Below, in pieces: positions 7,704 through 44,214 of a DNA stretch of 64,000 bases; position 1 is the first letter of the stretch, and the number at the start of each line of letters is the position of its first letter. The stretch lies in sequence record LR745208.1. The stretch is one strand, 5' to 3'. Below the pieces are notes generated by a model. The model had not been told where the DNA came from. It did not search any database and worked only from the letters and a program-made list of their open reading frames with translations. The translations under genes were made by a program, and so were the position numbers.

Positions 7704-7727
7704 CCCGCCAAAGGTGTAACTACAATC

Positions 7728-14565: not shown

Positions 14566-15269
14566 TCCCAGTCGAGCATGCAGCCAAGATGGGTTGCATG
14601 CTCTTCAATGCTGTCCGCCATATCCTCAGCGGTCCTAGCCTGCTGCCCAGCGTCCTCTTCCATGACAGGACACCATGGGGCATTGAAGGACGTAGTGGGG
14701 ATACCTCGTGGGGTTCCTACCATAATTTTCTCAACGGGGCCAACCCCTGCCAGGGTCCTCGTGTAGTGGAGCCCATCGGGGCTTGGCTTGACCGGCTTCC
14801 CAAGGATTTCGGGTACATGGGCCGCACATATGACGGGTGCCCCACCAGCCAGGACAAGCTTCTCAACCCCATGGGAGACCTCACTGTATTGTCCAGGCTG
14901 GCGATAGACACGGCTCAGGAGGCTCTTGATGGCACCCCTTCCTTCGGCGCTACCATTGGACCCTGCTAGACCTCCCTTGACACCGAACCGGGTTTTCTTG
15001 CATAGCTTGAAGGCAACAGGCGTTTCCCCATCGAAGTAAATTGACCATACATCAAACTCATTCAACCCTTGGGGGGAGGAAATGATCAGCCCCAATTGCC
15101 TGTAGGTAACTTCATACATTGCCCACACTGCATCCCTGTACTGGTCGTAGTCCCCATGCCCTATCTCAGTCCATTGCCCCATTGCTTCCTTGAGAAGGGG
15201 GAGGAGGTGGGGCCGAAGAGCCGGATTCTCGTGGGCAAGTCGGACCAGTTTGGATCGAAGGGTCACCAT
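14562..15269 (-). CDS. protein with TLRSKLVRLAH leader
   Basis: shared N-terminal motif. Confidence 0.8.
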   Translation of the reverse strand: MVTLRSKLVRLAHENPALRPHLLPLLKEAMGQWTEIGHGDYDQYRDAVWAMYEVTYRQLGLIISSPQGLNEFDVWSIYFDGETPVAFKLCKKTRFGVKGGLAGSNGSAEGRGAIKSLLSRVYRQPGQYSEVSHGVEKLVLAGGAPVICAAHVPEILGKPVKPSPDGLHYTRTLAGVGPVEKIMVGTPRGIPTTSFNAPWCPVMEEDAGQQARTAEDMADSIEEHATHLGCMLDWD

Positions 15270-20316: not shown

Positions 20317-20732
20317 CCAAAGACTTCCCGCTTTGACAGTAGGGCCAGTTCCTTGCGGGTCTTGAGATCAAAAGCTACAAACTGGGCTGCATTCTGCTTC
20401 CCAGTCGTAGGCAGGGCTGCCACGGGTTGCCCTGGTACCCGAAGGATCCATTGACCCTCTAGTTTCTCCCATTTTGCCTGATTGTCCAGGATCGTCTGGT
20501 GCCTCTGGTTCTCTTCCGTACCTGGAGTCTGGAGGTTGTTGTGGTACTGGTCCCGTAGGGCCACCTCCCGTTGCTCACGTCGCAATGCAGATGGCATCCA
20601 TTTGGCAATGGCCTCTTCATCCACGTCCCTCTTTTTGGGGCCACCAGCCGCTTCCTTCAATAGCGGAAGCAATTGCCCACGCAACTCGGGATTGGCATGT
20701 GCCAGACGAATGAGCTTGGAGCGAAGGGTCAT
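20283..20732 (-). CDS. protein with TLRSKLIRLAH leader
   Basis: shared N-terminal motif. Confidence 0.8.
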   Translation of the reverse strand: MTLRSKLIRLAHANPELRGQLLPLLKEAAGGPKKRDVDEEAIAKWMPSALRREQREVALRDQYHNNLQTPGTEENQRHQTILDNQAKWEKLEGQWILRVPGQPVAALPTTGKQNAAQFVAFDLKTRKELALLSKREVFGWLTKMALLDT

Positions 20733-27490: not shown

Positions 27491-29038
27491 ATGACCAACA
27501 CCAACCTGACACCCCCCTCCGCCGCCCCAACCAAATACACCCTTCACCACGGGGACTGCTTGGATGTCCTCAAGTCCCTACCAGCCAATTCCGTGGACGC
27601 CATCGTTACGGATCCCCCGGCAGGGATCAACTTCATGGGCAAGGATTGGGATAAGGACAAGGGTGGGCGGGACAAGTGGGTTGCTTGGATGACCGAGATA
27701 TCTCGTGAATGCATCCGCGTCATCAAGCCCGGTGGCCATGCCCTCGTGTGGGCAATTGGTCGCACATCTCATTGGACCGGCTGGGCCTGGGAGGATGCTG
27801 GCTGGGAAGTACGCGAAAAAATTACGCATTTGAATGGGCAGGGATTTCCGAAATCGTTGGATGTCAGCAAGGCGTTGGACAAACAGGCCGGAGCCGAGAG
27901 GGAAGTGGTTGGGTCGAAGGTGGGGCAACCAGGATACTCTGTGGCTCCTGGAAAAGGGCGCAACACCCTCAACTCGGCGAACGATGGCAGCCTCAACAAT
28001 TCTGACGCCGAATGTCAGATCACAGCCCCCTCCACCGACGCCGCTAAGAAGTGGGACGGTTGGGGGACGGCACTGAAACCTTCTAGTGAAGACTGGTGGA
28101 TGTTCCGTAAGCCCCTTGAAGGCACCGTAGCAGCCAATGTATTGGCCCATGGAACCGGGGCGCTCAATATCGATGGGTGTAGAATTGGATGTGAGTCTCG
28201 CCCTATCAACAACTACTCAAGTGAGGGGGCTCAAGGCTGTATGTCCCATGGTGAGGGTAAGGGTCACTCAGGTAAGGAGTACACAACCACGACAGTGTCC
28301 CAGGGCAGGTGGCCCGCAAACGCCGTCCTCAGCCACAACGAGGATTGCGTCGAAGTAGGCACCAGGAAGGTCAAGACCGGTACTGCCACCTTCAAGAATA
28401 CAGATGCCGGGACCGTGCTGGACTCCTACAGTGGGGGGCTGAAACGCCAGGACCACGGTGAGTATGGCCACGCAGACCCCGATGGCACCGAAACCGTACC
28501 CGCCTGGGATTGCACCCCCGATTGCCCCGTACGGATGTTGGACGAACAGAGCCTTGCTGGAGGCATGCACAGTGCTGGAGCCGCCCGAGACAAAACAGTA
28601 ACCTCAACCTATGAAGCATCCTCCTATGACCTGTCTGGACCCAGACCCATGGGGAGGCTAGGGGACACAGGAGGAGCCAGTAGATTCTTCTACTGCGCCA
28701 AAGCCTCCAAAGGTGACCGGGGCGAGGGTAACAATCACCCCACCGTAAAATCACAATCTCTTATGGTTTGGCTTTGCAGGCTAATCTGCCCACCCGGTGG
28801 GACCATCCTGGATCCCTTCCTGGGCAGTGGTACCACCGGTATCGCCGCCCTACTTGAGGGGTTCCGGTTCATTGGCATCGAGAAGGAGCTACCCTACTTC
28901 GAGATCGCTAAGGGACGAATCGAAAACTACAACCAACCAAAGGCTGCCCCCAAGGCGGCAACTAAGGTGGAGGGGGCAACTGAGGGTAAGAACCCCACCA
29001 CACCCGATACAGGCTCCATCCTGGACATGTTCGGGTGA
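27491..29038 (+). CDS. DNA N6-adenine/N4-cytosine methyltransferase (beta class)
   Basis: VTDPP, HPTVKS, LDPFLGSGTT, IGIEKE. Confidence 0.92.
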   Translation: MTNTNLTPPSAAPTKYTLHHGDCLDVLKSLPANSVDAIVTDPPAGINFMGKDWDKDKGGRDKWVAWMTEISRECIRVIKPGGHALVWAIGRTSHWTGWAWEDAGWEVREKITHLNGQGFPKSLDVSKALDKQAGAEREVVGSKVGQPGYSVAPGKGRNTLNSANDGSLNNSDAECQITAPSTDAAKKWDGWGTALKPSSEDWWMFRKPLEGTVAANVLAHGTGALNIDGCRIGCESRPINNYSSEGAQGCMSHGEGKGHSGKEYTTTTVSQGRWPANAVLSHNEDCVEVGTRKVKTGTATFKNTDAGTVLDSYSGGLKRQDHGEYGHADPDGTETVPAWDCTPDCPVRMLDEQSLAGGMHSAGAARDKTVTSTYEASSYDLSGPRPMGRLGDTGGASRFFYCAKASKGDRGEGNNHPTVKSQSLMVWLCRLICPPGGTILDPFLGSGTTGIAALLEGFRFIGIEKELPYFEIAKGRIENYNQPKAAPKAATKVEGATEGKNPTTPDTGSILDMFG

Positions 29039-30934: not shown

Positions 30935-31283
30935 GGAAGTCAATGGCCCCGAGGAGCCACAGGAGGCGTCCTACCTCTTTGGATGCCTCACTGCGTTCCC
31001 CGTTGGGGTCTTTAGGGAACTTTATAGTGATGTCAGCAACAGTGAAGCCAATGCCATTGCCGATACCATTCTGGATTTCCATGGCATGTTCAGCATAGTC
31101 GATCCCGTACTGTTCACTGAGGTCCAGGATTGCAGCCTCCCTGGCATCCCAAGCCCGTTTGATATGCTCCATCAGGTTGATGGGTGCGCCGCCAGCGGTC
31201 TTGAGCAAGGGCAACAGATGGGGCCGGAGAGCCGGGTTCTCTTGGGCTAGGCGGATCAACTTGGAGCGAAGGGTAGGGGCCAT
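30891..31283 (-). CDS. protein with TLRSKLIRLA leader
   Basis: shared N-terminal motif. Confidence 0.75.
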   Translation of the reverse strand: MAPTLRSKLIRLAQENPALRPHLLPLLKTAGGAPINLMEHIKRAWDAREAAILDLSEQYGIDYAEHAMEIQNGIGNGIGFTVADITIKFPKDPNGERSEASKEVGRLLWLLGAIDFLSSQINKSQDPSLR

Positions 31284-33928: not shown

Positions 33929-34195
33929 CTAGTCAATCTCCGTTCCATACTCCGCCCAGACAGCCGGTCCGACAATCCTTTGCCCTGCCAGAACACTCGC
34001 CGTGGGGTTGAAAGGCAGACCCTTCAGGACCCCCTCCTCGTTGACCACCAGGACATACCGTCGCTCACCGGGCAGCGGTCGCACAATCTCAATCCACCCA
34101 CCAACAGCCTCATGCAGCTGGTCCAGGGACAGCTCTGGCCCGTTCAGGCCATGAAGTGCCGTGACTGATCCGTCTGTACCGATGATTTTTGCCAT
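33929..34195 (-). CDS. DUF3846-like protein
   Basis: LDQLHEAVGGWIE..VNEEG..LPFN.TAS..IVG. Confidence 0.75.
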   Translation of the reverse strand: MAKIIGTDGSVTALHGLNGPELSLDQLHEAVGGWIEIVRPLPGERRYVLVVNEEGVLKGLPFNPTASVLAGQRIVGPAVWAEYGTEID

Positions 34196-34197
34196 GG

Positions 34198-34443
34198 CTA
34201 CTTTCCCAGTCCGAATTCGTCGATGGTGATGATCAGGGTCTGCCGCTGAACCTCAGCGACCGCCTCATTGAACTTCCATGCCTTGTAGGCATCGCTGACT
34301 GCCTTGTTGAAGTTACCGTCCGTACCCCCAGCCACATCACGGTCGAGTAGCTCCTTCCAGTACCTCTTGGCCTCCTCAACCTCTTTGAGGGCCATCCGGT
34401 AGGCAACTGCCGCAACCGTAACATGCATGTTCATCTTGTTCAC
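34198..34443 (-). CDS. hypothetical protein
   Basis: coupled ORF. Confidence 0.65.
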   Translation of the reverse strand: MNKMNMHVTVAAVAYRMALKEVEEAKRYWKELLDRDVAGGTDGNFNKAVSDAYKAWKFNEAVAEVQRQTLIITIDEFGLGK

Positions 34444-34643
34444 GGCCCAGTCTCCTCCAAAAGTTCCAGCTCGTCCTCCGACCAGGGGGCATCATCCTCA
34501 AACTCGTCATCCCACCGGATGAAGAACTCCAGGTGGACATCATCCACAGCGATGATGGTTCCCCTGGCCGCTGTATCGTCCTCTCCAAGACACAGCCCGG
34601 GCTTGACTCGAACTCGATCATGAAGCCTCATTGGTTTCCTCAA
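34440..34643 (-). CDS. SH3-like small protein
   Basis: DRVRV..GTI. Confidence 0.6.
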   Translation of the reverse strand: MRKPMRLHDRVRVKPGLCLGEDDTAARGTIIAVDDVHLEFFIRWDDEFEDDAPWSEDELELLEETGP

Positions 34644-34888
34644 TACTTCCCCGAGACAATCCCGTTGGCCAGCTCGATGGCATCCCTACGAAAGAAGTAT
34701 GTGCCCACGATGCCCCCGTTCAGGTACACCGTGAACCGAAGCCGGGGCGTGGGGTTGAAAACGTTGCCATTCTTGGGGTAGAGGTGCCCAATGACCACAC
34801 GCTCAATCGTGTACCCCGCCGCCTTGGCCCCCGCCGAAAGCCCCACCACGCTGAATGACGTGTGCCCGAGTTCGTTGATGGGATTCAT
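34640..34888 (-). CDS. hypothetical protein
   Basis: ATG after cassette. Confidence 0.7.
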   Translation of the reverse strand: MNPINELGHTSFSVVGLSAGAKAAGYTIERVVIGHLYPKNGNVFNPTPRLRFTVYLNGGIVGTYFFRRDAIELANGIVSGKY

Positions 34889-34893
34889 AGGTG

Positions 34894-34939
34894 CCTCAAT
34901 ACCCTATCGGCACGAGAAGGAGGATCTTTAGTGAAATCG
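34894..34939 (-). promoter_or_regulatory. sigma28-type promoter cassette
   Basis: motif copy. Confidence 0.8.
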
Positions 34940-35057
34940 ACCTGCCTCAATGCCCACCGGGGCCAAAACCTAACCCAAAGGGCACCATCAGCAGCCTCAA
35001 GTTGACAAATAGTTCAATGGTTTCGTCAAGACCTATGGATTGGTCAGACTCCCAGAG

Positions 35058-35165
35058 CTATGGGTACGGGAGGCTCTGCAGGGAGTCCAGCAACTTCTCG
35101 GTCTGGGCCCGACGCACCTGCAACTGGGCCACAATTGCCTTGACGAGCTGGTTGGGATCCCGCAT
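35058..35165 (-). pseudogene. fragment paralogous to C-terminus of 37525..37923
   Basis: MRDPNQLVKAIVAQL vs MRDPNQLVKAVVAGL. Confidence 0.6.
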
Positions 35166-35298
35166 CGATCTCAGGACATCCGAATAGAGCCTAGCAGGAC
35201 ATCCCACCCCGCGCTGGCCTGAGAAGCCTCTTCGGGTTTTTCTAGGATGCCCTGCCAGGACCTACTACCCATCCCGAGCCATATGGTGTCCATCCCTG

Positions 35299-35345
35299 CC
35301 TTCAAATACCTATCGGTATGGGAGGGGGACTTTTTAGGGAAATCG
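35299..35345 (-). promoter_or_regulatory. sigma28-type promoter cassette
   Basis: motif copy. Confidence 0.8.
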
Positions 35346-35536
35346 ACATTGGAAGAGCTACCAACATCCTTTCCTCAGACCGAGCTCGCTCATCATGGTC
35401 ATCCTGAGGGGGTGGGTTCATGGTTGGGATCCTCGCTGGGGCTGTTCGGAATGTCAAGGGCGGAGTAGGCTCGAAATTGAAGTTGTAGTGCTCGTTGCGC
35501 TGACCCAGGGACGGAGCCCACACCCCTGGGTCTTGT

Positions 35537-35637
35537 CCACCGGACCCAAAACCACACCCAAATGACACCAATGAGACACATCGGCTTACGAAATCATTGG
35601 ACTTTTCAGAATTGGTCACTTTTGGGGGTCCAGGACA
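35537..35637. repeat. ~100 bp R2 element, full copy
   Basis: CCAAAACC left arm, TACGAAATCATT core, TTGGTCACTTTTGGGGGTC right arm. Confidence 0.8.
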
Positions 35638-36068
35638 GTCCCCACGGCGAGCGCCCCTGCAACCCGATCCCAGAAGGCCTCGGTATCCATGTCATCGAGG
35701 TGGATCCTGACCTTCGTGATGCCATAGTCCCGTTTGATGGTGTTTTCAGCGATCCTGCGGTACCCAGCATCCTTGCTCTTTAGGGCTGTGAAGACTTCGT
35801 TGGCTGCCTTCAGGGTGTCCTTGAACCCCCGTACCTCATGCTGGAACACCACCACGAGGTTGCGATCCAGGAGGGTACTCACCTCAGTCCTCCAATGGGC
35901 AACCCACTTGGTCTGGCCATTCTTCTCGGCCAGCTGAGCCTTGTAGAACTCCAACAGAGCCCCTCCCGTGTGTTCCTCCACCTTGTCCTTGAAGGTCTCT
36001 CGGCTGTAGGCCATGGCCCTAAGAATACGCGTAGCGACCCGTTTGGCTGTTGGTTTCAAATCCGGCAT
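35616..36068 (-). CDS. protein with KRVATRIL leader; ends in R2-encoded LDPQK
   Basis: 150 aa ORF. Confidence 0.75.
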   Translation of the reverse strand: MPDLKPTAKRVATRILRAMAYSRETFKDKVEEHTGGALLEFYKAQLAEKNGQTKWVAHWRTEVSTLLDRNLVVVFQHEVRGFKDTLKAANEVFTALKSKDAGYRRIAENTIKRDYGITKVRIHLDDMDTEAFWDRVAGALAVGTVLDPQK

Positions 36069-36273
36069 TTCCGTCTCTTTCCAAAGTCGCGGGTTGGTCC
36101 GACAGACCCTACCAGAACCTCAACCACACCCGTCCCCGCTGTAACCCGGTTCCAAATGTGTTTACAGGCCATGATGTCCAACAGGGCTTTAAAGGGCCCA
36201 ACCAGAGTACATGGTGTTGAGGTCCTGGTAGGACCAGTCAAGAAAAGTGCCCCAGGGGCCAAAGATTAGGAAC

Positions 36274-36408
36274 CAGTACAGTCCGGTGGGACTCGAACCC
36301 ACATCCACGGTTTACAAAGCCGCTGCTCTGCCTGCTGATCTACCTCAATGTAGGTTATCCTAGGTTCCTACACCCACTTCCACCAGCTGAGCTACTTGGA
36401 CTGTACTG
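36274..36408 (-). tRNA. tRNA-Thr(UGU)-like with 52 nt D-loop insertion
   Basis: TAGCTCAGCTGGT..AGAGC, arm GCGGC-TTTGTAA-ACCGT, T arm GTGGG-TTCGAGT-CCCAC. Confidence 0.65.
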
Positions 36409-36409
36409 A

Positions 36410-36612
36410 CTCGATGAAGAATCCCATGTGTGGCCAGGAATTGAACCCAGCTACGGTCAGTCCACACCGACCGTCCCCATCCAGGGGCTAGGGGGAATCG
36501 AACCCCTGCACATCCAACACACACATGAGACTCGGTCGCGGGCAGGGGAGCTGCACCCCTCTAGCTTCATCAGCACCCTTTCGGGCCCCAGAACTCCTGG
36601 GCGGTCCGCGTT
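36410..36612 (-). ncRNA. promoter-driven structured RNA with three T-loop-like hairpins
   Basis: GGTTCAATTCC, GGTTCGATTCC, AGGGG-TGCAGCT-CCCCT, GCCC-GAAA-GGGT. Confidence 0.6.
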
Positions 36613-36616
36613 GTTG

Positions 36617-36662
36617 TTACAAACTACTATCGGTACGGGAAGGTGACTTTTTAGGGAAATCG
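36617..36662 (-). promoter_or_regulatory. sigma28-type promoter driving the RNA cluster
   Basis: motif copy, no RBS/ATG downstream. Confidence 0.8.
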
Positions 36663-37331
36663 TCACCGACCCATCACAACAGCCCCACAGCCAACATTGG
36701 CCATACATAGGATGCCACGTACCCCTTTGCTGGAGTTGCAGGACTTGCAGGCGATCACGATGTTCTCAGCCACATTGGGGCCACCCTTCGAGATTGGGGC
36801 TACATGGTCCACCGTAGGTTTGTCCCCATAGGGCTTGAGGCAGTAGGCACACAACCCACAAGATACCTCCAGGGCCAGCTCAACCTCATCCCCTGTGAGG
36901 GTACTCTCCACCTTGGCTAGATTGGCCCGACGCTGCTGGCGGTTCACAGTGAAATGTTCTGGGTGGGATTTGTAGAACCGGGCATCCTTCGCCCGTCTCC
37001 TTTCAGGGTGCTCCTTGTTCCGGGCATTTTGACGGGCCCGCACTGCTGCCCTGTTAGCCTGATAATAAGCTGCACTCCGGACCCTATATTTTTCAGGGTC
37101 CCTGGCATCCTCCCATGCCTGAACTCGTTCTGGATTGGAGGCACGATAAGCAATAACCTGCTCCTTAACCTTCACCCCGTCCCTCACGTAGCGTGCATGC
37201 CTGAGAATGGACATACACTCTTTACACTTGTACTTGTGCCCATCTTTAGCCCGTTTGTTAAGGCCAAAATCGTCAAGGGGCTTCAGAGTCCCACATTCGG
37301 AACATACTTTTTTAGCTGCCAAGGCATCCAT
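36663..37331 (-). CDS. HNH homing-type endonuclease
   Basis: CSEC, CKEC; CAYC..TVDHV.P.SKGG.N..NIV.AC..CN..K. Confidence 0.9.
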   Translation of the reverse strand: MDALAAKKVCSECGTLKPLDDFGLNKRAKDGHKYKCKECMSILRHARYVRDGVKVKEQVIAYRASNPERVQAWEDARDPEKYRVRSAAYYQANRAAVRARQNARNKEHPERRRAKDARFYKSHPEHFTVNRQQRRANLAKVESTLTGDEVELALEVSCGLCAYCLKPYGDKPTVDHVAPISKGGPNVAENIVIACKSCNSSKGVRGILCMANVGCGAVVMGR

Positions 37332-37463
37332 GCCAATGTGTGCGCAATAGGGAGATTAGCTGCGGGCCCTAACCTGAGCCCCGCCAGGGACTTGAACCCT
37401 GACCCGAAATCAAATGCCCGGTACTGCTCCATCTCACCCTTCGAAAGTCGAATCTTCATGGTA

Positions 37464-37509
37464 TCCTCAATATCCTATCGGTACGTGGAGGCAACTTTTA
37501 GTGAAATCA
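37464..37509 (-). promoter_or_regulatory. sigma28-type promoter cassette
   Basis: motif copy, 14 nt spacer. Confidence 0.75.
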
Positions 37510-37524
37510 TATTCGGCCCCCAAT

Positions 37525-37923
37525 TCAGCCCTGCCCGTCTTCGGACAGCATGGAACTAATCAACTTCTCGGCCGTGTCCCGACGCTCACGTAACCCGGCC
37601 ACAACCGCTTTGACCAGCTGGTTCGGATCCCTCATGGGCCCGATATTGCTCACAATTGTGTGTTCCCCACACACGATGTAGTGGCCATCCCCAGTTGGGT
37701 AAATTGAGAACTCCTTCGTGAACCTCAGGCAATAGTGCCAGCCGAGATTTTCCCACACGTCCACAACCCACCCCCCAGTCCTCATCCTCTTCAGGAGCTT
37801 CTGGGCTTCCCGCCCAGCGGTTTCGTATGCCTCCCGGGTACACCCTCCCCCGCAAGCCGGAGAACAATAGACCCCCCCGCGAAGTACCGGTGTCCATGAC
37901 AGTTTCTTTGCAACAGGCTTCAT
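37525..37923 (-). CDS. hypothetical protein
   Basis: YCSPACGGGC, VWENLGWHY. Confidence 0.75.
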   Translation of the reverse strand: MKPVAKKLSWTPVLRGGVYCSPACGGGCTREAYETAGREAQKLLKRMRTGGWVVDVWENLGWHYCLRFTKEFSIYPTGDGHYIVCGEHTIVSNIGPMRDPNQLVKAVVAGLRERRDTAEKLISSMLSEDGQG

Positions 37924-37953
37924 TTCTTCAAGTCTCCAGTTTCAATGCCAGGG

Positions 37954-38313
37954 CTACCCGTACACGATCTCCCCAAACAGGGCACATTGGATGAACACGT
38001 CAGCCGTGACCATATCACAGTTGCTGATCAGGACATCCTTGAAATGGTCAGGGTACTCCCGGGCCATCACCTGAAGGCCCCTCACGATGGAAGCATGGTT
38101 CATCACACACTCCCGCCTGGGGTCCTCGTTCTCGTAGATGGTCACCCCCCAGTAGTGTGCCCGGTCGGGACAGCTTGTGGAGTCCACATGCCCCCAATAC
38201 CGGATTCCGCCAGACTCGATGGCACTGATCAGCAAGGACTCGATCTCCTCGTTCTCAACCTCGAACGTCACGGTTACGGATGTCTTGGGCTGCTCAACTT
38301 CACGCTTGGTCAT
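37954..38313 (-). CDS. phage hypothetical protein
   Basis: AIESGGIRYW..ADVFIQCALFGEIVYG. Confidence 0.8.
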   Translation of the reverse strand: MTKREVEQPKTSVTVTFEVENEEIESLLISAIESGGIRYWGHVDSTSCPDRAHYWGVTIYENEDPRRECVMNHASIVRGLQVMAREYPDHFKDVLISNCDMVTADVFIQCALFGEIVYG

Positions 38314-38372
38314 TGGTCAATCCTTTTATCAGTCGGGCTGTATCCTCAGAGATCCAAACTGGACCCCACGCT

Positions 38373-38417
38373 ACCTCACTACCTATCGGCACGGGAAGCC
38401 AACTTTTTAGCAAAATC
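38373..38417 (-). promoter_or_regulatory. sigma28-type promoter cassette
   Basis: motif copy. Confidence 0.8.
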
Positions 38418-38496
38418 CCACGGCGGCCCTATGTGGCCCTATACCTCGAAGCTCAGTTCCTTTCAGCATGGAGAAATCGGCTGTAGCCCTCACAAA

Positions 38497-38868
38497 TCAG
38501 GCCCGACTCCAAGGTCCCTGCTTGGGACTGGAGACCCACTCCAAGGGTTCCCTGCCCAGCTTCCCAGAATCAAAGGTCACGGTAACCAGAGCCAGCCTAC
38601 CAGACAGGGCTTCGGTCCCGCCTATACGAGCGAACTCAAGTGGGACCCCAGCCTCAGTACACAGCTGACGGGCCTGCCCCTCCGCCCGAAGGCAGGCTTG
38701 ATGGTTACTAGGCCCAAGAGACCGCAACTCCTCAACCCCCTCGCTCGCAGAAGCCACACGATCCCTCTCAGCTCGGGTAGGACCCATGTTGGCCAGGAAG
38801 GTAGCAATCACGTCACCGCGTTCCCACGTCGTCTCACTCATGTCCCCTGTTACGCCCTCCGGGGTCAA
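38497..38868 (-). CDS. hypothetical protein
   Basis: ORF. Confidence 0.55.
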   Translation of the reverse strand: MTPEGVTGDMSETTWERGDVIATFLANMGPTRAERDRVASASEGVEELRSLGPSNHQACLRAEGQARQLCTEAGVPLEFARIGGTEALSGRLALVTVTFDSGKLGREPLEWVSSPKQGPWSRA

Positions 38869-38957
38869 AACCTAACCTAAATGGCCCCTGACTCCCTCAC
38901 GGCCTTACGAAATCATTAGGTTTTCTCGGATTGGTCACTTTTGAGGGTCTCGGACAG
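38859..38957. repeat. ~100 bp R2 element, full copy
   Basis: as 35537. Confidence 0.8.
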
Positions 38958-39234
38958 GACCCCGTTCCACGAATCGTCGGTGGCAGTCTGCACCCACCGG
39001 AAACTCTCCCATGTACCCAGGTGCACTGGCGTCACTGTCCTGGTCCCCCCATGCCGCACCACCGTCGATCACAATGGCAAGATACGGGTAGTCCCCCTCC
39101 TGGCTTTGTTCGCCCATACACCGCACCGGGCGCTCACAGATTGCACACTGCGCCTCATCCGACCTGTACGCATGGGCTCTGCCCGTCCCCATCGCGAACG
39201 GAGGAACCGCAAATGATCCATCTGGCCTCTTCAT
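38935..39234 (-). CDS. hypothetical protein ending in R2-encoded DPQK
   Basis: CAIC..C; stop inside R2. Confidence 0.7.
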   Translation of the reverse strand: MKRPDGSFAVPPFAMGTGRAHAYRSDEAQCAICERPVRCMGEQSQEGDYPYLAIVIDGGAAWGDQDSDASAPGYMGEFPVGADCHRRFVERGPVRDPQK

Positions 39235-39289
39235 CCCAATCGCGAGGTGCGGTGTAATAACTTCACACGTCAGTTCATGCCCCGTCCGA

Positions 39290-39335
39290 TTCTCGCGTCT
39301 CGTCGGTATGATGTCTCAACTTTTAACCGAAATCG
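39290..39335 (-). promoter_or_regulatory. degenerate sigma28-type cassette (ACCGACG -10)
   Basis: CGATTTCGGTTAAAAG..CATACCGACG. Confidence 0.55.
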
Positions 39336-39354
39336 GCCATTGCCATATGTGGCC

Positions 39355-39681
39355 CTATACCTCGAAGCTCAGCTCCTTGAACAGGTCCTTCGCAGCCTCA
39401 AGCCCCAGGGCCCGATCAACCACCTCCAGGCGTACCACCCTGCGAAGCCCCTCAACAGCCTCCCTGATCGATGAACAGAACTCGGATGCAAAGGTGGTGA
39501 GATCCCCATCAGGTCCCAAGTCAGCCATGGCACGGTACTCAGGACCAGCTGCCCGGGGATAGACACACACCCGAATTGGTAACCCCCCAAACACACCAAG
39601 CTCGTCCTTGGTCAAGATATGAGGACGATCCTGAGCCTCATCACTGTATTGGATATCTGTCAGCTTGTTCATCATCTTCAT
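39355..39681 (-). CDS. hypothetical protein
   Basis: ATG after cassette. Confidence 0.7.
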   Translation of the reverse strand: MKMMNKLTDIQYSDEAQDRPHILTKDELGVFGGLPIRVCVYPRAAGPEYRAMADLGPDGDLTTFASEFCSSIREAVEGLRRVVRLEVVDRALGLEAAKDLFKELSFEV

Positions 39682-39684
39682 GTC

Positions 39685-39731
39685 ATCACTACCCCTATTG
39701 GTAACGGGAGACCCCACTTTTAGGAAAATCG
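39685..39731 (-). promoter_or_regulatory. sigma28-type promoter cassette (ACCAATA variant)
   Basis: motif copy. Confidence 0.7.
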
Positions 39732-39742
39732 ACCTACTTCGA

Positions 39743-39845
39743 TGCCCACCGGGGTCAAAACCTAACCAAAATGGCCCCCGCTAGCCTTACCGGCTGACGT
39801 AATCATTAGGTTTTCTCGGATTGGTCACTTTTGGGGGTCCAGGAC
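39743..39845. repeat. ~100 bp R2 element, full copy
   Basis: as 35537. Confidence 0.8.
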
Positions 39846-40226
39846 AAGGCCCTCCGTTGGGACTAGATCCCGGCTCCGAAAAAGGACCGGATAGTTCGCC
39901 TCAGGGAGACCTTCCAGGTAGACTGTGTACCGACCGGTGCTGGTACAACATTTCCGGACCTCTCCGTACAGTCCCTTGAAGGGACCCTTTTCACGAACCC
40001 GGACCCGAACGCCACTTCCAGGCTGGAAGGAGCCAATTAGGGTTGCAGGCTCATTGGAAATGGAGCCGGGGACATCTGCCATAAGGATGAGCCTGTCCCC
40101 ATCATCAACCCCAAGACGATGGAGGCCCCGGCGGGCATCCACATCGAGTATGACCTTGGTGTTCCCAGGCATCTTCCCGCTTTGCAGGATCCGCTGCAAT
40201 GACTCGAAAAGTTCTTGGACGGTCAT
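39825..40226 (-). CDS. hypothetical protein (SH3-like C-terminus) ending in R2-encoded LDPQK
   Basis: stop inside R2. Confidence 0.7.
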   Translation of the reverse strand: MTVQELFESLQRILQSGKMPGNTKVILDVDARRGLHRLGVDDGDRLILMADVPGSISNEPATLIGSFQPGSGVRVRVREKGPFKGLYGEVRKCCTSTGRYTVYLEGLPEANYPVLFRSRDLVPTEGLVLDPQK

Positions 40227-40537
40227 CGTACAACCCTCAGAGCGGGCTTCCCTCGCATGGCTACCGGGAGGGGATTGATGACGGCATACCAGCCCGTACA
40301 GAGCTCAGCATACACACCACAAGCCTGGAGGGCTCCATCCATCTCTACCGCACGGTCACCCTCAGGGTCGAAGAAGGGGGCAAGGTTACCTCCTCCATGG
40401 ACCACCACGAGAAGAGCACTGGGATGGACTTGGTTCCACTCCCCCACAGAGGCATTCCATTCCTTGGGGGTGTAGAACTTACCGTCAGGAATATCCCCAA
40501 CGAGGTTCTGAACCACTTGTCGGAGCTTGAGGGTCAC
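40223..40537 (-). CDS. paralog of 13579..13938
   Basis: VVVHGGG..GVYAELCTGWY. Confidence 0.7.
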   Translation of the reverse strand: MTLKLRQVVQNLVGDIPDGKFYTPKEWNASVGEWNQVHPSALLVVVHGGGNLAPFFDPEGDRAVEMDGALQACGVYAELCTGWYAVINPLPVAMRGKPALRVVR

Positions 40538-40818
40538 AGCCAGCGACCCTTGGACGGGGAAAGGATCGTGTCGACCCCATTCAGGGTCGAGTAGGCAGAG
40601 ACCACTGCCCGGCCATCCAGGAACATGACCTTGGCAAGGGTCACCTCTCCCGCCAGGAAGGCCAGCCCCATCTTGGTCCTGATATCCTGGGTGACCAGGA
40701 AAAGCTTCCACTCAGGACCGTCCCAGTGCCCCTTGTACTGAGGGTACCGGGCATTCTGAAGCTCCGCATTCCTGCGAAGCCGGACAATCCGCTCAGCTGG
40801 ATCCTTGGGTGTGGTCAT
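40534..40818 (-). CDS. hypothetical protein
   Basis: ATG after cassette. Confidence 0.75.
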   Translation of the reverse strand: MTTPKDPAERIVRLRRNAELQNARYPQYKGHWDGPEWKLFLVTQDIRTKMGLAFLAGEVTLAKVMFLDGRAVVSAYSTLNGVDTILSPSKGRWL

Positions 40819-40823
40819 CTTAA

Positions 40824-40868
40824 CCTCACTACCCTATCGGCACGAGAAGACAACTTTTTAGTGAAATC
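40824..40868 (-). promoter_or_regulatory. sigma28-type promoter cassette
   Basis: motif copy. Confidence 0.8.
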
Positions 40869-41072
40869 CTACGGTGGCCCTAGTACCGGCTCGATCAAGT
40901 TGACCATTTTCCCACAAGCTGCGGGGGAACACCCATCCGAACAGCCCCTGTCGGCAATCCTCCAAACCTCACGTAGAACCGCATAGGCGGCATCCCGCTC
41001 TCGAAGGATCCGTTCCATCTTCTCGTAGGCTAAAGAGGGGAGGAGTGCAAAATCATCATCATCCGTGAGCAT
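40869..41072 (-). CDS. hypothetical protein
   Basis: ORF. Confidence 0.55.
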   Translation of the reverse strand: MLTDDDDFALLPSLAYEKMERILRERDAAYAVLREVWRIADRGCSDGCSPAACGKMVNLIEPVLGPP

Positions 41073-41096
41073 GCCCCTATTACCCCCATCCCGTAT

Positions 41097-41196
41097 CCCA
41101 CCGGACCCAAAACCTAACCAAAACAGCTCCGCCTACCCCACATCACTGACGGAACTATTGGGGATTTTGTCGGAGTGTGGTTTTGACCCCGGTGGG
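41097..41196. repeat. R2-related element with two left arms in inverted orientation
   Basis: CCCACCGGACCCAAAACC ... GGTTTTGACCCCGGTGGG. Confidence 0.7.
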
Positions 41197-41493
41197 ACAG
41201 GCAATCCCCATGTTGGCCATGATGGCAGCCTCTCGCTGTTCATCAGGCACCCCAAATGTCATGGCCTTCGCTTCCTCCCTACCCCTAGTAGGTGCCTGCA
41301 TCCTATGTAGCTCCTCCCTCAGGAACCACATGGGCTCACCCTCTCCCTCAAGCTGTACTAGAACTTGGCTGCTACCCTCTCGACCCACCACAATTCCATC
41401 CCGGCCATCTATGGCCACCAAGCCAGTCTGGGGAAGACCTGCCTCAGGTCGCCATTGAGAAGCCACTCGAACGGTGTCCCCCAATAGGATCAT
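41155..41493 (-). CDS. SH3-like hypothetical protein
   Basis: LGDTVRV..GIVV. Confidence 0.5.
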   Translation of the reverse strand: MILLGDTVRVASQWRPEAGLPQTGLVAIDGRDGIVVGREGSSQVLVQLEGEGEPMWFLREELHRMQAPTRGREEAKAMTFGVPDEQREAAIMANMGIACPTGVKTTLRQNPQ

Positions 41494-41548
41494 GTCCTGT
41501 AGAGTCTGCTGTCCTAGGGACCGACCCACCCGTGGGATTTTGGTCACT

Positions 41549-42076
41549 TCAGGCGAGTGCAGGACTACTACCCCCCCCATCCACCTTTGGGACATCAGGT
41601 GAGGCAGTGACCCTCTCCAAATGGCGTAGAGCAATCAGCTCAATGTGCCCGTCAGGAAACAGGACCCAAGAAGAGTCCCGTACATCATCCCCCTCAACTA
41701 CAACTGGTAGGAATAGCGGAGGGAGTGGTTCCACTATCACCCCAATCTGAAGATGAACCCGAGCACCCCAGCCATTTGGCCAGTTCACCTTGACCTTATC
41801 CCCTACCAGGATTGGATCCTCCACAGATGCCAGCAAAGTCTCATATTGCTCGTGCACCTCACTGGCCCTACGTACCCTGTTCTGTAACTCCCCCCTGAGG
41901 TCCACAAGGGCCATCTCAAGGGTAGGACCATAACCACAGGCCCCATCAGGCCCATCATCCGCCTCCACCCGATAGTGGGCATCCCATTGCGGGAGATATA
42001 CGTGAACTGCCGTGATGGGAAGTGCACCCCACCTGCCCAATTGGTCCTTGCCTAACTTGTACTCCATGTGTGCCAT
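41549..42076 (-). CDS. hypothetical protein (HicB-like segment plus SH3-like)
   Basis: YRVEAD..GYGPTLEMAL; VGDKVKV. Confidence 0.65.
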   Translation of the reverse strand: MAHMEYKLGKDQLGRWGALPITAVHVYLPQWDAHYRVEADDGPDGACGYGPTLEMALVDLRGELQNRVRRASEVHEQYETLLASVEDPILVGDKVKVNWPNGWGARVHLQIGVIVEPLPPLFLPVVVEGDDVRDSSWVLFPDGHIELIALRHLERVTASPDVPKVDGGGSSPALA

Positions 42077-42078
42077 GG

Positions 42079-42300
42079 CTACTTGCCCCCTACTAGATGA
42101 CGCCTTGCTATGGCATCATGGGTCCGCTCATTACTGACAAAAGTCCCCAGAAGCGCAATCAGCCTGATTCGGGATACACTCACCTGAGAAGCCGTAGCCC
42201 CAAATCGCTCCCTCCCTAATTGCTGGAGGGCCAATCCCGAAACCCGGGAATCCTTGAGCAGTATCTCCACTTCATCCAATGTCAGCTTCTCATAACTCAT
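42079..42300 (-). CDS. hypothetical protein
   Basis: ORF with RBS. Confidence 0.6.
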   Translation of the reverse strand: MSYEKLTLDEVEILLKDSRVSGLALQQLGRERFGATASQVSVSRIRLIALLGTFVSNERTHDAIARRHLVGGK

Positions 42301-42474
42301 TGTGGTTCCTTTGTTTGTGATGTTTGGTAAGGGACTGGCTGGAGACTGTGGAGTTCGGGACTGACTCTGGCCGGAGAGCCCAAGTCAGGTTGAGTTGAGG
42401 GCCAAAGTATTGGCCGGGATTTCAGTTTCAATATTTTTGGGTCCAAAATCATTGGGGCTTTAACTATTTGACTC

Positions 42475-42780
42475 CTACCGACCCGACCCTCGCTCTCCGG
42501 CGTCGGTAGGGTCCTCCCCATCCCTCGAAGGGACCCTGATGTCCCACCCCGTTGTGGCTCCATGGATGAGCCCACAGGACTTGGTTCCTAGGGGGCACAC
42601 GCAGGACAGGACGGGGTTAATCTGGCAAGAGGGGTCTTGTTTGCCCTGTTCTAGTGCCCGGTCTTCACAGGGAATGTGATCCATGCAAATGAACTGACCC
42701 GGATGGGTAATTGGGGAAGCTGCCTTCATGTGAGGCCGAATCTGTTGGGTTCCACAGCGGGCGCATGAGACGAGGGTCAT
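42475..42780 (-). CDS. Cys-rich hypothetical protein
   Basis: CARC, C.D..C. Confidence 0.55.
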   Translation of the reverse strand: MTLVSCARCGTQQIRPHMKAASPITHPGQFICMDHIPCEDRALEQGKQDPSCQINPVLSCVCPLGTKSCGLIHGATTGWDIRVPSRDGEDPTDAGERGSGR

Positions 42781-42984
42781 TTACCTACTTGCTCTTCCTA
42801 GGGTTCCGATGATGATCTCTTTACAAGTAGGGCATTGGACCAGATACTCACTTGGGCCTGCCGCACACTCTCCAAGGGTATGGGACGATTCCCACACCTG
42901 GAACTCGACCAAGGTCAAACAGTACTGGCAGGTACCGTGGCAGATTGCATCTTGGGGTCTTGTTCCTTCACGTAGTACAATCAT
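42781..42984 (-). CDS. zinc-ribbon small protein
   Basis: CQYC..CPTC. Confidence 0.7.
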   Translation of the reverse strand: MIVLREGTRPQDAICHGTCQYCLTLVEFQVWESSHTLGECAAGPSEYLVQCPTCKEIIIGTLGRASR

Positions 42985-43220
42985 GGGCTCACCAGGATGG
43001 GAGCACCGCAGTCCCCGTCAAAGGTAGGGTCATTTGGGTCCAGGTGGCGGTCTTCTGGGAGGGTCTGCCAAGCTGTAGGTGCCTTGAGGGTGGCCTTACG
43101 TGGGGGTGTGGGTGCCAGGACAGCTACGGTGATCATGGCACCCAGGGCGATGGCAGCCAGGGTCAGGAAGATGAACTCCCAGGGGTTGTCCCAAGGGTCA
43201 TTTGGGTGTGTCTCAGTCAT
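42981..43220 (-). CDS. small membrane protein
   Basis: single hydrophobic segment. Confidence 0.6.
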   Translation of the reverse strand: MTETHPNDPWDNPWEFIFLTLAAIALGAMITVAVLAPTPPRKATLKAPTAWQTLPEDRHLDPNDPTFDGDCGAPILVSP

Positions 43221-43249
43221 GGGTTTAGTTACCCCTCCTGTAGTTGTTC

Positions 43250-43357
43250 CAGACCCCCCCAAAACCGACACCTTCTGGATTCTCGGCAAATTGTCCAATG
43301 ATTTCGTAGTGGGCTATAGTAGGTGGTCTCTATTCGGGTGTGGTTTTGGCCCCGTGG
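43250..43357. repeat. R2 element, reverse orientation
   Basis: CCAATGATTTCGTAG core; GGTGTGGTTTTGGCCCCGTGG arm. Confidence 0.75.
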
Positions 43358-43451
43358 AGCATGACGGGGTGGTTGGGGGTGGGGTTTTTGGGATTGTGGG
43401 TCCTTATGGGAGGGGTCCTATATTGTGGGTTTGTGGCAACCCTGAGTTTTG

Positions 43452-43498
43452 AAATCGTTTCAAGCGATTCGTTTCGAGCGAATCGCTTGAAACGATTT
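43452..43498. repeat. perfect 20 bp inverted repeat, 7 nt loop
   Basis: AAATCGTTTCAAGCGATTCG / CGAATCGCTTGAAACGATTT. Confidence 0.9.
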
Positions 43499-43872
43499 GT
43501 CCCAATTGGAATCGTTTGAATGTATTTGAGTTTCAATAACTTGTGGGGTCCCAGAGGGGTTTCCCAACGGCTAGTGGGTGGTCCATTTTGGACCAGTCCT
43601 GTTACCTGATAGGTTAAGGGGACTTAGTCACCAAGGTGTTCTATTAATGGGTCCAAGTACTTGGGGTTGTCGGTCTTAGGGATACCCATTCATCGCAGAC
43701 TTGGCGTGTAGTGCAGATGAGGAGTGCCCACACACCCGAGCCAAAGATGATGGCGAGGAGGATGCCAAAGCCTATGTAGGAGGGCCAGTCTTCGTTCCAC
43801 ACGTTTGAGCGGCCCTGGTCATTGGGTGTTTGGGGGGTGGTGGGACCCATGGTTGGCGGTAGTTGGGTGGGG

Positions 43873-44214
43873 TCATTGCTCTGGGGGTCTTGGGATGTCT
43901 GGCCAACATTGGGGGCCTTGGGAGTTGAGGATCTGTCGTTGGTCTTTGGTGAGGGCGTCCCAAGCTGCATCCATCTGGTCAAGGATGTCGTCTTCCAGTT
44001 CCATGTCAGCCTGACGGGCGGTGGTGGTTCTTGTGCCATGGAAGGATGGGTCATCGAGGGAGGCTTCTTTGGCCCGGATGTCCCATAGTTGGCATTGGAG
44101 GTTCCGGTAGGTTTTGAGGGGGTCTGTGGGGTCGTCCATATCATTTAGTTCCAGCTGGTAGTGTTTTGGACAGGTGGTGTTCCAGCTGGCTACGGAGTAG
44201 GTCTTCCGCTTCAC
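43873..44214 (-). CDS. hypothetical protein
   Basis: EDDILDQMD..W. Confidence 0.55.
   Translation of the reverse strand: MKRKTYSVASWNTTCPKHYQLELNDMDDPTDPLKTYRNLQCQLWDIRAKEASLDDPSFHGTRTTTARQADMELEDDILDQMDAAWDALTKDQRQILNSQGPQCWPDIPRPPEQ

What the first reader, a model, noticed from the sequence alone, without database searches (positions are those of the whole stretch)
34951..43357. ~100 bp MITE-like repeat that donates the same DPQK-stop to three unrelated genes
Seen: full copies at 35537, 38859, 39743 and (reversed) 43250, partial at 34951, double-left-arm at 41097. Arms are imperfectly inverted around TACGAAATCATT(A/G)G. The right arm encodes the stop of 35616 (LDPQK), 38935 (RDPQK) and 39825 (LDPQK). 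Inference: a small mobile or recombinogenic element that lands in gene 3' ends and caps them, or a site for a phage recombinase; possibly a common C-terminal tag.
Basis: partly seen in the sequence, partly recalled or inferred. Interest (0 to 1): 0.75.

Follow-up and report, generated by a model that had tools for sequence, protein, structure and literature searches.

The report
Local palindromic repeat capping phage genes
A 104-base, roughly palindromic DNA module occurs six times within one 8.4-kb stretch of a 485-kb uncultured phage and supplies the last codons and stop codon of four unrelated small genes; it looks like a locally duplicated gene-boundary module, not a jumping element.

Summary
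The repeat is real. There are six copies, at 34950-35066, 35531-35648, 38850-38967, 39741-39856 and 41092-41204 (minus strand) and 43240-43368 (plus strand). Each is recovered by a profile built from the other five (E 5e-8 to 2e-25).

The window is the first 64 kb of LR745208.1, a 485-kb uncultured groundwater phage. The repeat occurs nowhere else in that genome. Outside this phage it was not found in GenBank phages, IMG/VR, JGI metagenomes or GTDB genomes.

Three unrelated genes end inside its left arm with the same frame and sequence (…V-L/R-D-P-Q-K-TGA). A fourth gene ends in copy F. None of 150 homologs of the one gene that has relatives ends in DPQK, so the tail comes from the repeat.

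Evidence for mobility is lacking:
- there are no target duplications;
- there is no dispersal across the genome;
- 24 population contigs show no polymorphism;
- no partner transposase was found.

It is not a structured RNA, a terminator or the phage's 62-copy promoter. Two or three conserved blocks flank a 20-nt spacer of fixed length and random sequence, which points to a protein-recognised boundary signal.

Best reading: a locally duplicated junction module in an ORFan-rich region, working like T4 PeSL cassettes. Interest is moderate.

The parts
34950..35066 (-). Copy E. It has the right arm/block 3, a 19-nt spacer and 'TGACCAATCC', but lacks the coding arm. Its central motif is inverted or palindromised. 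It is followed directly by a promoter copy.
   Evidence: E 7e-8 when left out; block-2 profile hits the + strand at 35008-35028
35531..35648 (-). Copy A, 104-nt core. Its left arm holds the last codons and the TGA of gene 35616-36068. The arms are significantly inverted.
38850..38967 (-). Copy B, 104-nt core. Its left arm holds the last codons and the TGA of ORF 38935-39234. The next gene's ATG (38841) lies 12 nt after the right arm.
39741..39856 (-). Copy C, 104-nt core. Its left arm holds the last codons and the TGA of gene 39825-40226. It is followed directly by a promoter copy, and the junction is shared with E.
   Evidence: (family D5)
41092..41204 (-). Copy F. Its left arm is an inverted copy of a right arm, giving a true ~20-bp-stem palindrome. 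It holds the last 13 codons and the TAG of ORF 41155-41580. The next gene's ATG (41072) lies 23 nt after the right arm.
   Evidence: I7; RNA z -4.7; DNA z -3.8
43240..43368 (+). Copy D, in the opposite orientation, inside the 420-nt gene-free stretch 43223-43643. It has a 13-nt insertion and caps no gene.
35616..36068 (-). Gene for a 150-aa protein with 178 database relatives. It ends ...AVGTVLDPQK-TGA inside copy A.
38935..39234 (-). 99-aa ORF with no relatives; gene callers call it only in shorter forms. It ends ...ERGPVRDPQK-TGA inside copy B.
39825..40226 (-). Gene for a 133-aa ORFan protein. It ends ...TEGLVLDPQK-TGA inside copy C.
41155..41580 (-). Gene for a 141-aa ORFan protein. It ends ...PTGVKTTLRQNPQ-TAG inside copy F.
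34894..34943 (-). A copy of the genome-wide promoter+RBS motif, abutting copy E. The E+promoter unit and the C+promoter unit are 86% identical across the junction.
   Evidence: (D5)
39693..39735 (-). A copy of the genome-wide promoter+RBS motif, abutting copy C.
38426..38462 (-). An unused 37-nt copy (95% identical) of the last 7 codons and stop of gene 39355-39681, lying in front of another promoter. It is independent evidence that 'gene 3' end + intergenic signal' units are duplicated in this region.
   Evidence: (D10)

Best explanation
The repeat is a ~104-nt quasi-palindromic gene-boundary module. It has been copied six times by local duplication and recombination inside one ORFan-rich, hyperplastic early-gene stretch of a 485-kb phage.

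Each copy has four parts:
- a left arm (TGTCC-GGACCCCCAAAAGTGACCAAT);
- a central motif (CCAATGATTTCGTAAG);
- a spacer that is 20 nt in five copies (19 nt in E) and has random sequence;
- the best-conserved right block (CATTTGGGTTAGGTTTTGRCCCCGGTGGGCAT).

Shown here:
- The copies are confined to 8.4 kb.
- They sit at the ends of promoter-headed gene groups. They come either directly before the next promoter (C, E) or before one small promoter-less ORF (A, B, F).
- Upstream ORFs run into the left arm and take their last 7-13 codons and stop codon from it.
- That tail is foreign to the one protein family that has relatives.

Inferred:
- Duplications and recombination whose breakpoints fall in gene 3' ends carried a stub of an earlier gene (…VLDPQK-TGA) along with the module. 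New upstream genes were fused to it in frame. The capping is therefore a by-product and not a tag.
- The conserved blocks at fixed distance, around a saturated spacer, mean the module is kept by selection as a DNA-level signal read by a protein. The likeliest signal is transcriptional: an alternative promoter or a boundary signal. GATTTC and TAGGTT, the two motifs it shares with the phage's main promoter, lie in its conserved blocks.
- Like T4-type PeSL cassettes, the copies also offer homology for shuffling the small genes between them.
- F's converted arm and E's flipped centre show hairpin-templated repair acting on the palindrome.
For: Local restriction: profiles of the whole element and of each block, plus fuzzy searches for each arm, find only these six copies in 485 kb. 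My own rough arithmetic for six random sites all falling within 8.4 kb is 6 x (8416/485034)^5, about 1e-8.

Conservation pattern: mean pairwise identity is 0.77 in block 3, 0.65 in block 2, and 0.86-0.93 in block 1 among A-C. The spacer is 0.36, the same as unrelated flanks at 0.37-0.38. The core is exactly 104 nt in A, B, C and F.

Context: the 62-copy promoter+RBS motif heads the neighbouring genes. C and E are fused to it with a shared junction. B and F end 12 and 23 nt before the next ATG, with no main promoter between.

Foreign tail: the three proteins share only their last 8 residues. 0 of 150 homologs of the 150-aa protein carry DPQK, and homology ends at about residues 141-144.

Junction-module duplication happens here independently: a 37-nt gene 3' end plus promoter is copied at 38426-38462, and a 36-aa ORF is paralogous to the C-terminus of another gene.

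Hyperplastic character: three of the four capped ORFs have no relative among 5.8 billion proteins. Most neighbours have no Pfam or PHROG hit, and there is a free-standing HNH endonuclease.

Shared motifs: across the genome, GATT[TA]C-N24-40-TAGG[GT]T occurs only in main promoters and in copies B and C.

Known precedents: PeSL cassettes (PMC2839356, PMC4122927) and repeats that give genes new C-termini (PMC5896051).
Against: - No transcript data exist, so a promoter or boundary function is untested.
- The main-promoter profile does not detect the element even at E<=100. A and D lack the TAGGTT motif.
- No sigma-70-type promoter or intrinsic terminator is predicted in the copies.
- Block conservation could result from gene conversion between copies and not from selection.
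- All three A/B/C tails being in the same frame (about 1 in 9 by chance) might hint at a use for the peptide.
- Recombination between copies has not been seen: all population contigs are collinear and about 100% identical.
- There are no related phages with which to reconstruct any event.
Confidence: 0.5

Rival explanations
1. It is a non-autonomous mobile element (MITE/REPIN/PATE-like palindrome). A transposase supplied in trans moved it, it inserted near gene 3' ends, and it is now decaying.
For: Its size is ~104 nt and it has no coding capacity of its own. Copies D, F and A have significant terminal inverted repeats, and F is a stable hairpin. Copies lie only between genes or on their 3' ends. 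One copy is inverted. The genome carries four TnpB-type (IS605-family) genes. Bacterial MITEs are known to overlap gene 3' ends and donate C-termini (PMC5896051), and MITEs do occur in viruses (PMC11602168).
Against: All copies lie within 8.4 kb of 485 kb. There are no target-site duplications. Three copies lack significant inverted arms. No presence/absence variation appears in about 24 assemblies. No copy is found in other phages, in metagenome contigs or in 185,579 species' genomes by the exact right-arm pattern. The TnpB elements' ends are unrelated. No transposase lies within +/-10 kb. A saturated spacer with preserved length and conserved blocks fits old, constrained copies better than a recent burst.
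Confidence: 0.2
2. The copies are target sites of a site-specific recombinase, either attC-like cassette boundaries or invertase sites, and they delimit exchangeable gene cassettes.
For: The copies are imperfect palindromes with a variable centre, placed at the 3' ends of small unrelated genes arranged in one direction. One copy (D) is inverted. GTTAGGT (= GTTRRRY) is present in the right arm of B, C, E and F.
Against: No integrase or recombinase domain is recorded in the genes within +/-10 kb, and none appears in the Pfam/PHROG scans of the cluster. No RYYYAAC partner lies on the same strand, and A and D have GTGTGGT. Only F folds as single-stranded DNA. Many 'cassettes' carry their own promoter. 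The population shows no rearranged variants.
Confidence: 0.07
3. The shared ...VLDPQK end, or its mRNA sequence CCCCCAAAAGUGA, is itself functional. It could be a C-terminal tag such as a degradation or localisation signal, or a recoding site such as a -1 slip on A-AAG before UGA.
For: Three unrelated ORFs use the same frame. A_AAG followed by a stop codon is a known kind of slippery context (own knowledge).
Against: The conserved unit runs about 80 nt past the stop and is best conserved at its far end. Copies D and E cap no gene, and F caps with a different peptide. The -1 frame is open for only 13 codons in B and C, and its sequence is not conserved. D has a 13-nt insertion there. With only three cases, the same frame is expected about 1 time in 9.
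Confidence: 0.05
4. Each copy encodes a small RNA with constant handles and an individual 20-nt segment (a guide-like or antisense regulator), or it is a structured cis-regulatory RNA.
For: Conserved blocks flank a spacer of fixed length and unrelated sequence in all six copies. The genome carries RNA-guided TnpB-type genes.
Against: There is no consensus secondary structure and essentially no covariation. Five of the six copies fold no better than shuffles as RNA. No Rfam family matches, even at E<=5. The spacers have no match with <=3 mismatches elsewhere in the genome. The three spacers tested have no exact match in IMG/VR except in the phage itself. There is no similarity to the 3' ends of the TnpB genes.
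Confidence: 0.05

Closest known systems
PeSL cassettes (promoter-early stem-loop) of T4-type phages (PMC2839356, PMC4122927)
   Same: Both are short conserved intergenic modules repeated between small ORFan genes in hyperplastic regions of a large phage. Both sit at gene boundaries next to promoters and are proposed to act both as regulatory signals and as homology for shuffling the genes between them.
   Different: PeSLs are a sigma-70-type promoter plus a terminator hairpin. This module has neither. It is about twice as long and quasi-palindromic. It overlaps coding 3' ends and occurs in only one region. Recombination products have been shown for PeSLs but not here.
Bacterial MITEs that overlap gene 3' ends, e.g. 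Coxiella QMITE1/QMITE2 (PMC5896051)
   Same: Both are ~100-nt non-coding repeats with inverted ends whose copies overlap the 3' ends of unrelated genes. They provide the C-terminal residues and the stop without much changing protein length.
   Different: Those are dispersed in tens of copies with direct repeats and have IS relatives. This one has six clustered copies, no target duplications and no partner element, and it is in a phage.
REPINs / REP doublets and Rickettsia palindromic elements (own knowledge: Bertels & Rainey 2011; Ogata et al. 2000)
   Same: Both are ~100-nt palindromes made of two inverted conserved arms around a less conserved centre. They lie outside genes or are fused in frame to coding sequence.
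   Different: REPINs number in the hundreds and depend on a RAYT transposase. RPEs insert inside genes. Here the best-conserved parts include a non-palindromic central motif, only one copy is a stable hairpin, and no RAYT or Y1 transposase was seen.
Integron attC sites
   Same: Both are imperfect palindromes with a variable centre at the 3' end of each of several unrelated, co-oriented small genes.
   Different: The core-site pair is not present, no integrase is nearby, only one copy folds as single-stranded DNA, and many of the genes have their own promoters.

Membership tests
MITE | Small (50-500 bp) with no coding capacity of its own | tested here: met
   The core is 104-117 nt, and every frame has stops within about 20 codons.
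MITE | Terminal inverted repeats | tested here: inconclusive
   Arms are significantly inverted in D (0/500 shuffles), F (2/500) and A (6/500), but not in B (49/500), C (221/500) or E (248/500).
MITE | Target-site duplications flanking copies | tested here: not met
   The best flank-to-flank matches are no better than shuffles: A 104/300, B 81/300, C 250/300, D 150/300, F 12/300.
MITE | Copies dispersed through the genome, with evidence of movement (empty sites, polymorphism) | tested here: not met
   All six copies lie in 34950-43368 of a 485,034-bp genome. About 24 population contigs are collinear and 99.8-100% identical.
MITE | A related autonomous element or transposase with matching ends | tested here: inconclusive
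   No transposase or recombinase domain lies within +/-10 kb. The four TnpB-type copies have no similarity to the arms. The rest of the genome's proteins were not scanned.
T4-type PeSL cassette | Contains a strong sigma-70-like early promoter | tested here: not met
   No sigma-70-type site is found in the five co-oriented copies, and only one weak 9/12 match lies in D. The profile of the phage's own 62-copy promoter does not detect the element.
T4-type PeSL cassette | Contains a stem-loop that terminates transcription | tested here: not met
   There are no terminator-like sites at the copies. Folding z-scores are about 0 for A, B, C and E, and the spacer hairpins are no better than shuffles.
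T4-type PeSL cassette | Lies between small non-essential/ORFan genes in a hyperplastic region | tested here: met
   The ORFs are 35-222 aa and mostly lack any family hit. Three of the four capped ORFs have no relatives. Duplicated gene fragments are present.
T4-type PeSL cassette | Recombination between copies produces indels, replacements or mini-circles | not testable with these tools
   No related genome was found, and the population contigs are identical.
REP / REPIN | Two inverted REP arms forming a long hairpin; many dispersed copies; an associated RAYT transposase | tested here: not met
   Only F is a stable hairpin (RNA z -4.7, DNA z -3.8). There are six clustered copies, and no Y1-type transposase in the neighbourhood.
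Integron attC | Paired core sites RYYYAAC ... GTTRRRY on one strand, and a foldable bottom strand | tested here: not met
   GTTAGGT is present in B, C, E and F but has no RYYYAAC partner, and A and D read GTGTGGT (sequence read). Five of the six copies do not fold as DNA.
Integron attC | An adjacent integron integrase with attI and Pc | tested here: not met
   No integrase or recombinase domain is recorded in the called genes within +/-10 kb or found in the cluster scans.
Any Rfam RNA family (REP-like, cis-regulatory, sRNA) | A match to a curated covariance model | tested here: not met
   No hit overlaps any copy at the gathering score or at E<=5.

The most novel reading that the evidence does not exclude
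The two conserved handles with an individually different spacer (20 nt in five copies, 19 in E) form a family of addressable, guide-like RNA or DNA modules. Each copy would be aimed at a different target, possibly serving the phage's TnpB-type nucleases or an unknown partner. The palindromic arms and the gene capping would then be secondary.
Probability: 0.03. Interest if true: 0.85.

Novelty: new variant of a known kind. Interest (0 to 1): 0.38.

Why it matters
Huge phages carry hundreds of small ORFan genes, and little is known about how these are gained, lost and wired into expression. This locus shows a concrete trace of that process. A boundary module is copied locally together with a stub of coding sequence, and four unrelated genes now take their C-terminus and stop codon from it.

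If the module is a transcription signal, it defines a second signal class beside the phage's 62-copy promoter. If its copies recombine, it is a counterpart, in a very different phage, of the T4 PeSL shuffling mechanism. There is also a practical point: shared C-terminal peptides in phage ORFans can be repeat-derived and should not be read as protein homology.

Tried and rejected
1. Genome-wide MITE. Profiles and fuzzy searches over all 485 kb found nothing outside the 8.4 kb.

2. Copies in other organisms. The following returned only the same phage plus single chance hits to the searched pattern:
- a central-motif-to-arm pattern in IMG/VR;
- the right-arm pattern in IMG/VR, JGI metagenomes and GTDB genomes;
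- blastn of a copy against GenBank phages.

3. Population polymorphism. 24 contigs carrying the 133-aa gene are collinear and 99.8-100% identical.

4. Relatives of the phage through a neighbouring 439-aa protein. Only the phage itself was found.

5. Homologs of the capped proteins. Only the 150-aa protein has any. Contigs of its two closest relatives hold neither the element nor the promoter motif.

6. Structured RNA or terminator. There is no consensus structure, no Rfam match and no terminator. The spacer hairpins are not better than chance.

7. A derivative of the main promoter. The profile does not detect the element; only two short motifs are shared.

8. Spacers as guides. They have no targets in the genome or in IMG/VR.

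9. Replication origin at the local GC-skew minimum near 42 kb. The genome-wide cumulative minimum is near 430 kb, so the 35-42 kb skew is a local compositional feature.

10. Stop-codon recoding, suggested by a tRNA with anticodon TTA. A crude ORF-coverage test was uninformative.

11. An 11-nt resemblance between the right arm and a nearby tRNA-like 3' end. I judged it to be chance (own estimate).

12. A cognate DNA-binding protein in the cluster. The 73-aa ORF 42079-42300 looked like a helix-turn-helix by eye. It has no Pfam, PHROG or PDB sequence hit, and its model (pLDDT 84) has no significant structural match.

Full report
**Where the window comes from.** The 10 kb around the finding is 100% identical to bases 34000-44000 of LR745208.1. 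This is an unannotated 485,034-bp 'uncultured phage' assembly, so the window is its first 64 kb. The same genome is in IMG/VR as a 485,040-bp contig. It also appears in groundwater metagenome assemblies from ENA, JGI and Logan. The window has no N. I fetched the rest of the genome in ten pieces for copy counting.

**The observation.** Genes here run on the minus strand, so I describe the copies in that orientation. They are E 34950-35066, A 35531-35648, B 38850-38967, C 39741-39856 and F 41092-41204, with D 43240-43368 on the plus strand. A profile built from any five copies recovers the sixth against the whole genome (E from 5e-8 to 2e-25). It finds nothing else at E<=10. B and C are 85% identical over 116 nt.

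With common anchors, A, B, C and F are each exactly 104 nt, and D has a 13-nt insertion. The three ORFs 35616-36068, 38935-39234 and 39825-40226 end in the left arm in the same frame: V-L/R-D-P-Q-K-TGA.

Three things were not in the first description:
- F caps a fourth ORF, 41155-41580, which ends ...PTGVKTTLRQNPQ-TAG.
- E is nearly complete, but its central motif is flipped.
- Only D, F and A have arms that are inverted beyond chance.

**Anatomy.** In gene orientation each copy reads as follows:
- block 1: TGTCC-TGGACCCCCAAAAG-TGA-CCAAT;
- a short link;
- block 2: CCAATGATTTCGTAAG;
- a 20-nt spacer (19 nt in E);
- block 3: CATTTGGGTTAGGTTTTGRCCCCGGTGGGCAT.

Mean pairwise identity is 0.77 in block 3 and 0.65 in block 2 (about 0.8 without E). 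In block 1 it is 0.86-0.93 among A-C. The spacer is 0.36, the same as the unrelated flanks at 0.37-0.38. The spacer sequence is therefore saturated while its length is preserved.

F's left arm is an exact inverted copy of a right-arm-type sequence. F is the only copy that folds far better than shuffles (RNA z -4.7, DNA z -3.8).

**Distribution.** None of the three blocks occurs anywhere else in the 485 kb. Six random sites falling within 8.4 kb has a probability of roughly 1e-8 (my arithmetic).

Outside this phage, the following all returned only the same phage plus single chance hits to the searched pattern itself:
- a central-motif-to-arm pattern in IMG/VR;
- the right-arm pattern in IMG/VR, JGI metagenomes and one genome per 185,579 species;
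- blastn against 50,697 GenBank phages.

About 24 contigs of the phage population are collinear and 99.8-100% identical across the region.

**The capped genes.** The three DPQK proteins share nothing except their last 8 residues. The 150-aa protein has 178 relatives in a library of 1.84 billion representatives. Alignments end at about residues 136-144 of 150. C-terminal tails differ in every relative, and none of the 150 listed contains DPQK. The contigs of its two closest relatives hold neither the element nor the promoter motif.

The 133-aa, 99-aa and 141-aa ORFs have no relatives among 5.8 billion proteins. Their codon-position composition looks coding, although the 99-aa ORF is called only in shorter forms.

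**Context.** A second, much larger repeat family is a promoter-plus-ribosome-site motif: cGATTTCnCTAAAAAGT-N9/10-CGTrCCGATAGGGT, then GAGG and ATG. It has 62 copies, mostly in the first 160 kb. In the focal region it heads most gene groups.

The element copies lie at the downstream ends of such groups. C and E abut the next promoter, and their junction is shared (86% identity across it). A, B and F are each followed by a single small ORF that has no main promoter of its own.

The region is ORFan-rich and contains a free-standing HNH endonuclease and three tRNA-like remnants. It also shows other duplicated junction pieces. A 37-nt copy of the last 7 codons plus stop of gene 39355-39681 sits unused in front of another promoter. 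A 36-aa ORF is paralogous to the C-terminus of a neighbouring gene.

**What it is not.**
- It matches no Rfam family, even at E<=5.
- It has no consensus RNA structure.
- It has no intrinsic terminator and no sigma-70-type promoter.
- Its spacer hairpins are no better than chance.
- The main-promoter profile does not detect it.
- Its flanks show no target-site duplications.
- No transposase or recombinase domain is recorded within +/-10 kb.
- The genome's four TnpB-type genes have ends unrelated to the arms.
- The spacers have no targets in the genome, and the three tested have none in IMG/VR.

**Best explanation (confidence about 0.5).** This is a locally duplicated gene-boundary module in a hyperplastic early region.

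The duplicated unit included a stub of an earlier gene's 3' end, and upstream ORFs now terminate in it. This is supported by four findings: the foreign tail, the shared frame and nucleotide sequence, the independent example at 38426-38462, and the strict locality.

Conserved blocks at fixed spacing around a saturated spacer argue that the module is maintained as a protein-read DNA signal. Its position, and the presence of GATTTC and TAGGTT in its conserved blocks, make a transcriptional role the likeliest. Across the genome, GATT[TA]C-N24-40-TAGG[GT]T occurs only in main promoters and in copies B and C. The role could be an alternative promoter or a boundary signal. This step is inference.

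By analogy with T4-type PeSL cassettes (PMC2839356, PMC4122927), the copies would also serve as homology for shuffling the genes between them. This too is inferred and was not observed.

**Rivals.**
- A decaying MITE/REPIN-like element (0.2). This fits the size, the partial inverted arms and the known habit of bacterial MITEs of donating C-termini (PMC5896051). It fails on dispersal, target duplications, polymorphism and a partner element.
- Recombinase sites (0.07).
- A functional tag or recoding site (0.05).
- A small or guide-like RNA (0.05).

Each of the last three lacks positive evidence and is contradicted by the tests above.

**Novelty and interest.** The sequence family is new and so far unique to this phage. 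The kind of thing is not new: repeated intergenic modules in phage hyperplastic regions are known, and so are repeats that cap genes in bacteria. What differs is the combination:
- strict locality;
- a quasi-palindrome with a non-palindromic conserved centre;
- a fixed-length free spacer;
- in-frame capping of four ORFs in a huge phage.

I rate it a new variant of a known kind, with moderate interest (0.38). The decisive data are split reads in the source metagenomes, transcript ends and related genomes, and none of these can be reached with the tools here.

Noticed in passing
window-wide, e.g. 12941-12987(+), 34894-34943(-), 40824-40872(-); 62 copies in the genome: A ~47-nt promoter-plus-RBS-like motif: cGATTTCnCTAAAAAGT-N9/10-CGTrCCGATAGGGT, then GAGG and ATG within about 20 nt. 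It sits in front of many small genes, mostly in genome 1-160 kb. It is not sigma-70-like, so it is probably read by a phage-specific or unusual host factor.
   Followed up: partly
window 93-1535 (+); also genome 181557-182706, 374413-374718, 460760-462300: A 480-aa TnpB-type protein (OrfB_IS605 plus the Cas12f1-like TNB domain) present in four full or partial copies that are 80-90% identical. This is an IS605-family, RNA-guided-nuclease-like element inside a huge phage.
   Followed up: partly
window 7629-7705 (+): A tRNA with anticodon TTA, which would read the UAA stop codon, found by both ARAGORN and Rfam. A crude ORF-coverage comparison gave no sign of stop-codon recoding but was not a real test.
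   Followed up: partly
window 36260-36600 (-): Three tRNA-like units in tandem between a promoter copy and the 150-aa gene. Only one reaches the Rfam tRNA threshold (36285-36343, partial model), and ARAGORN calls none. They are degenerate or unusual tRNA genes.
   Followed up: no
window 43223-43643, palindrome 43452-43498: A 420-nt gene-free stretch next to copy D. It holds a perfect 20+20-nt palindrome (AAATCGTTTCAAGCGATTCG / CGAATCGCTTGAAACGATTT) whose halves contain CGATTT-like motifs resembling the upstream part of the main promoter. It may be a regulatory hub.
   Followed up: no
window 35000-42000: GC skew of about -0.15 on the + strand, while the adjacent 42-54 kb is about +0.1 although its genes are on the same strand. 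The genome-wide cumulative minimum is near 430 kb, so this is local composition and not an origin. The repeat-bearing block may have a separate history.
   Followed up: partly
window 38426-38462 and 39342-39378: A 37-nt repeat (95% identical) covering the last 7 codons and TAG of gene 39355-39681. The second copy lies unused downstream of another gene's stop and in front of a promoter.
   Followed up: yes
window 35058-35165 and 37525-37635: A stand-alone 35-aa ORF (MRDPNQLVK...) is paralogous to the C-terminal 36 residues of the 132-aa ORF 37525-37923 (65% aa identity, 75% nt identity). This is a domain-sized fragment duplication.
   Followed up: partly
window 15183-15263, 20647-20732, 31200-31274; also genome ~275.6, 351.5, 351.8, 390.9, 398.5, 432.6, 433.3 kb: An ~80-nt repeat that is the conserved N-terminal coding part (roughly MTTLRSKLIRLAHENP..LRPQLLPLLKEA) of a paralogous protein family with at least ten members.
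   Followed up: partly
window 40223-40818 (-): Two ORFs (94 aa from the promoter-proximal ATG at 40818, and 104-162 aa in another frame) overlap by 4 to 180 nt depending on the start chosen. This could be a frameshift or simply two coupled genes.
   Followed up: no
window 36663-37331 (-), 27491-29038 (+), 33929-34195 (-): Annotatable genes near the repeat cluster: a free-standing HNH endonuclease (PF01844; PHROG 'endonuclease VII'), an N6/N4 DNA methylase, and a DUF3846 protein.
   Followed up: partly
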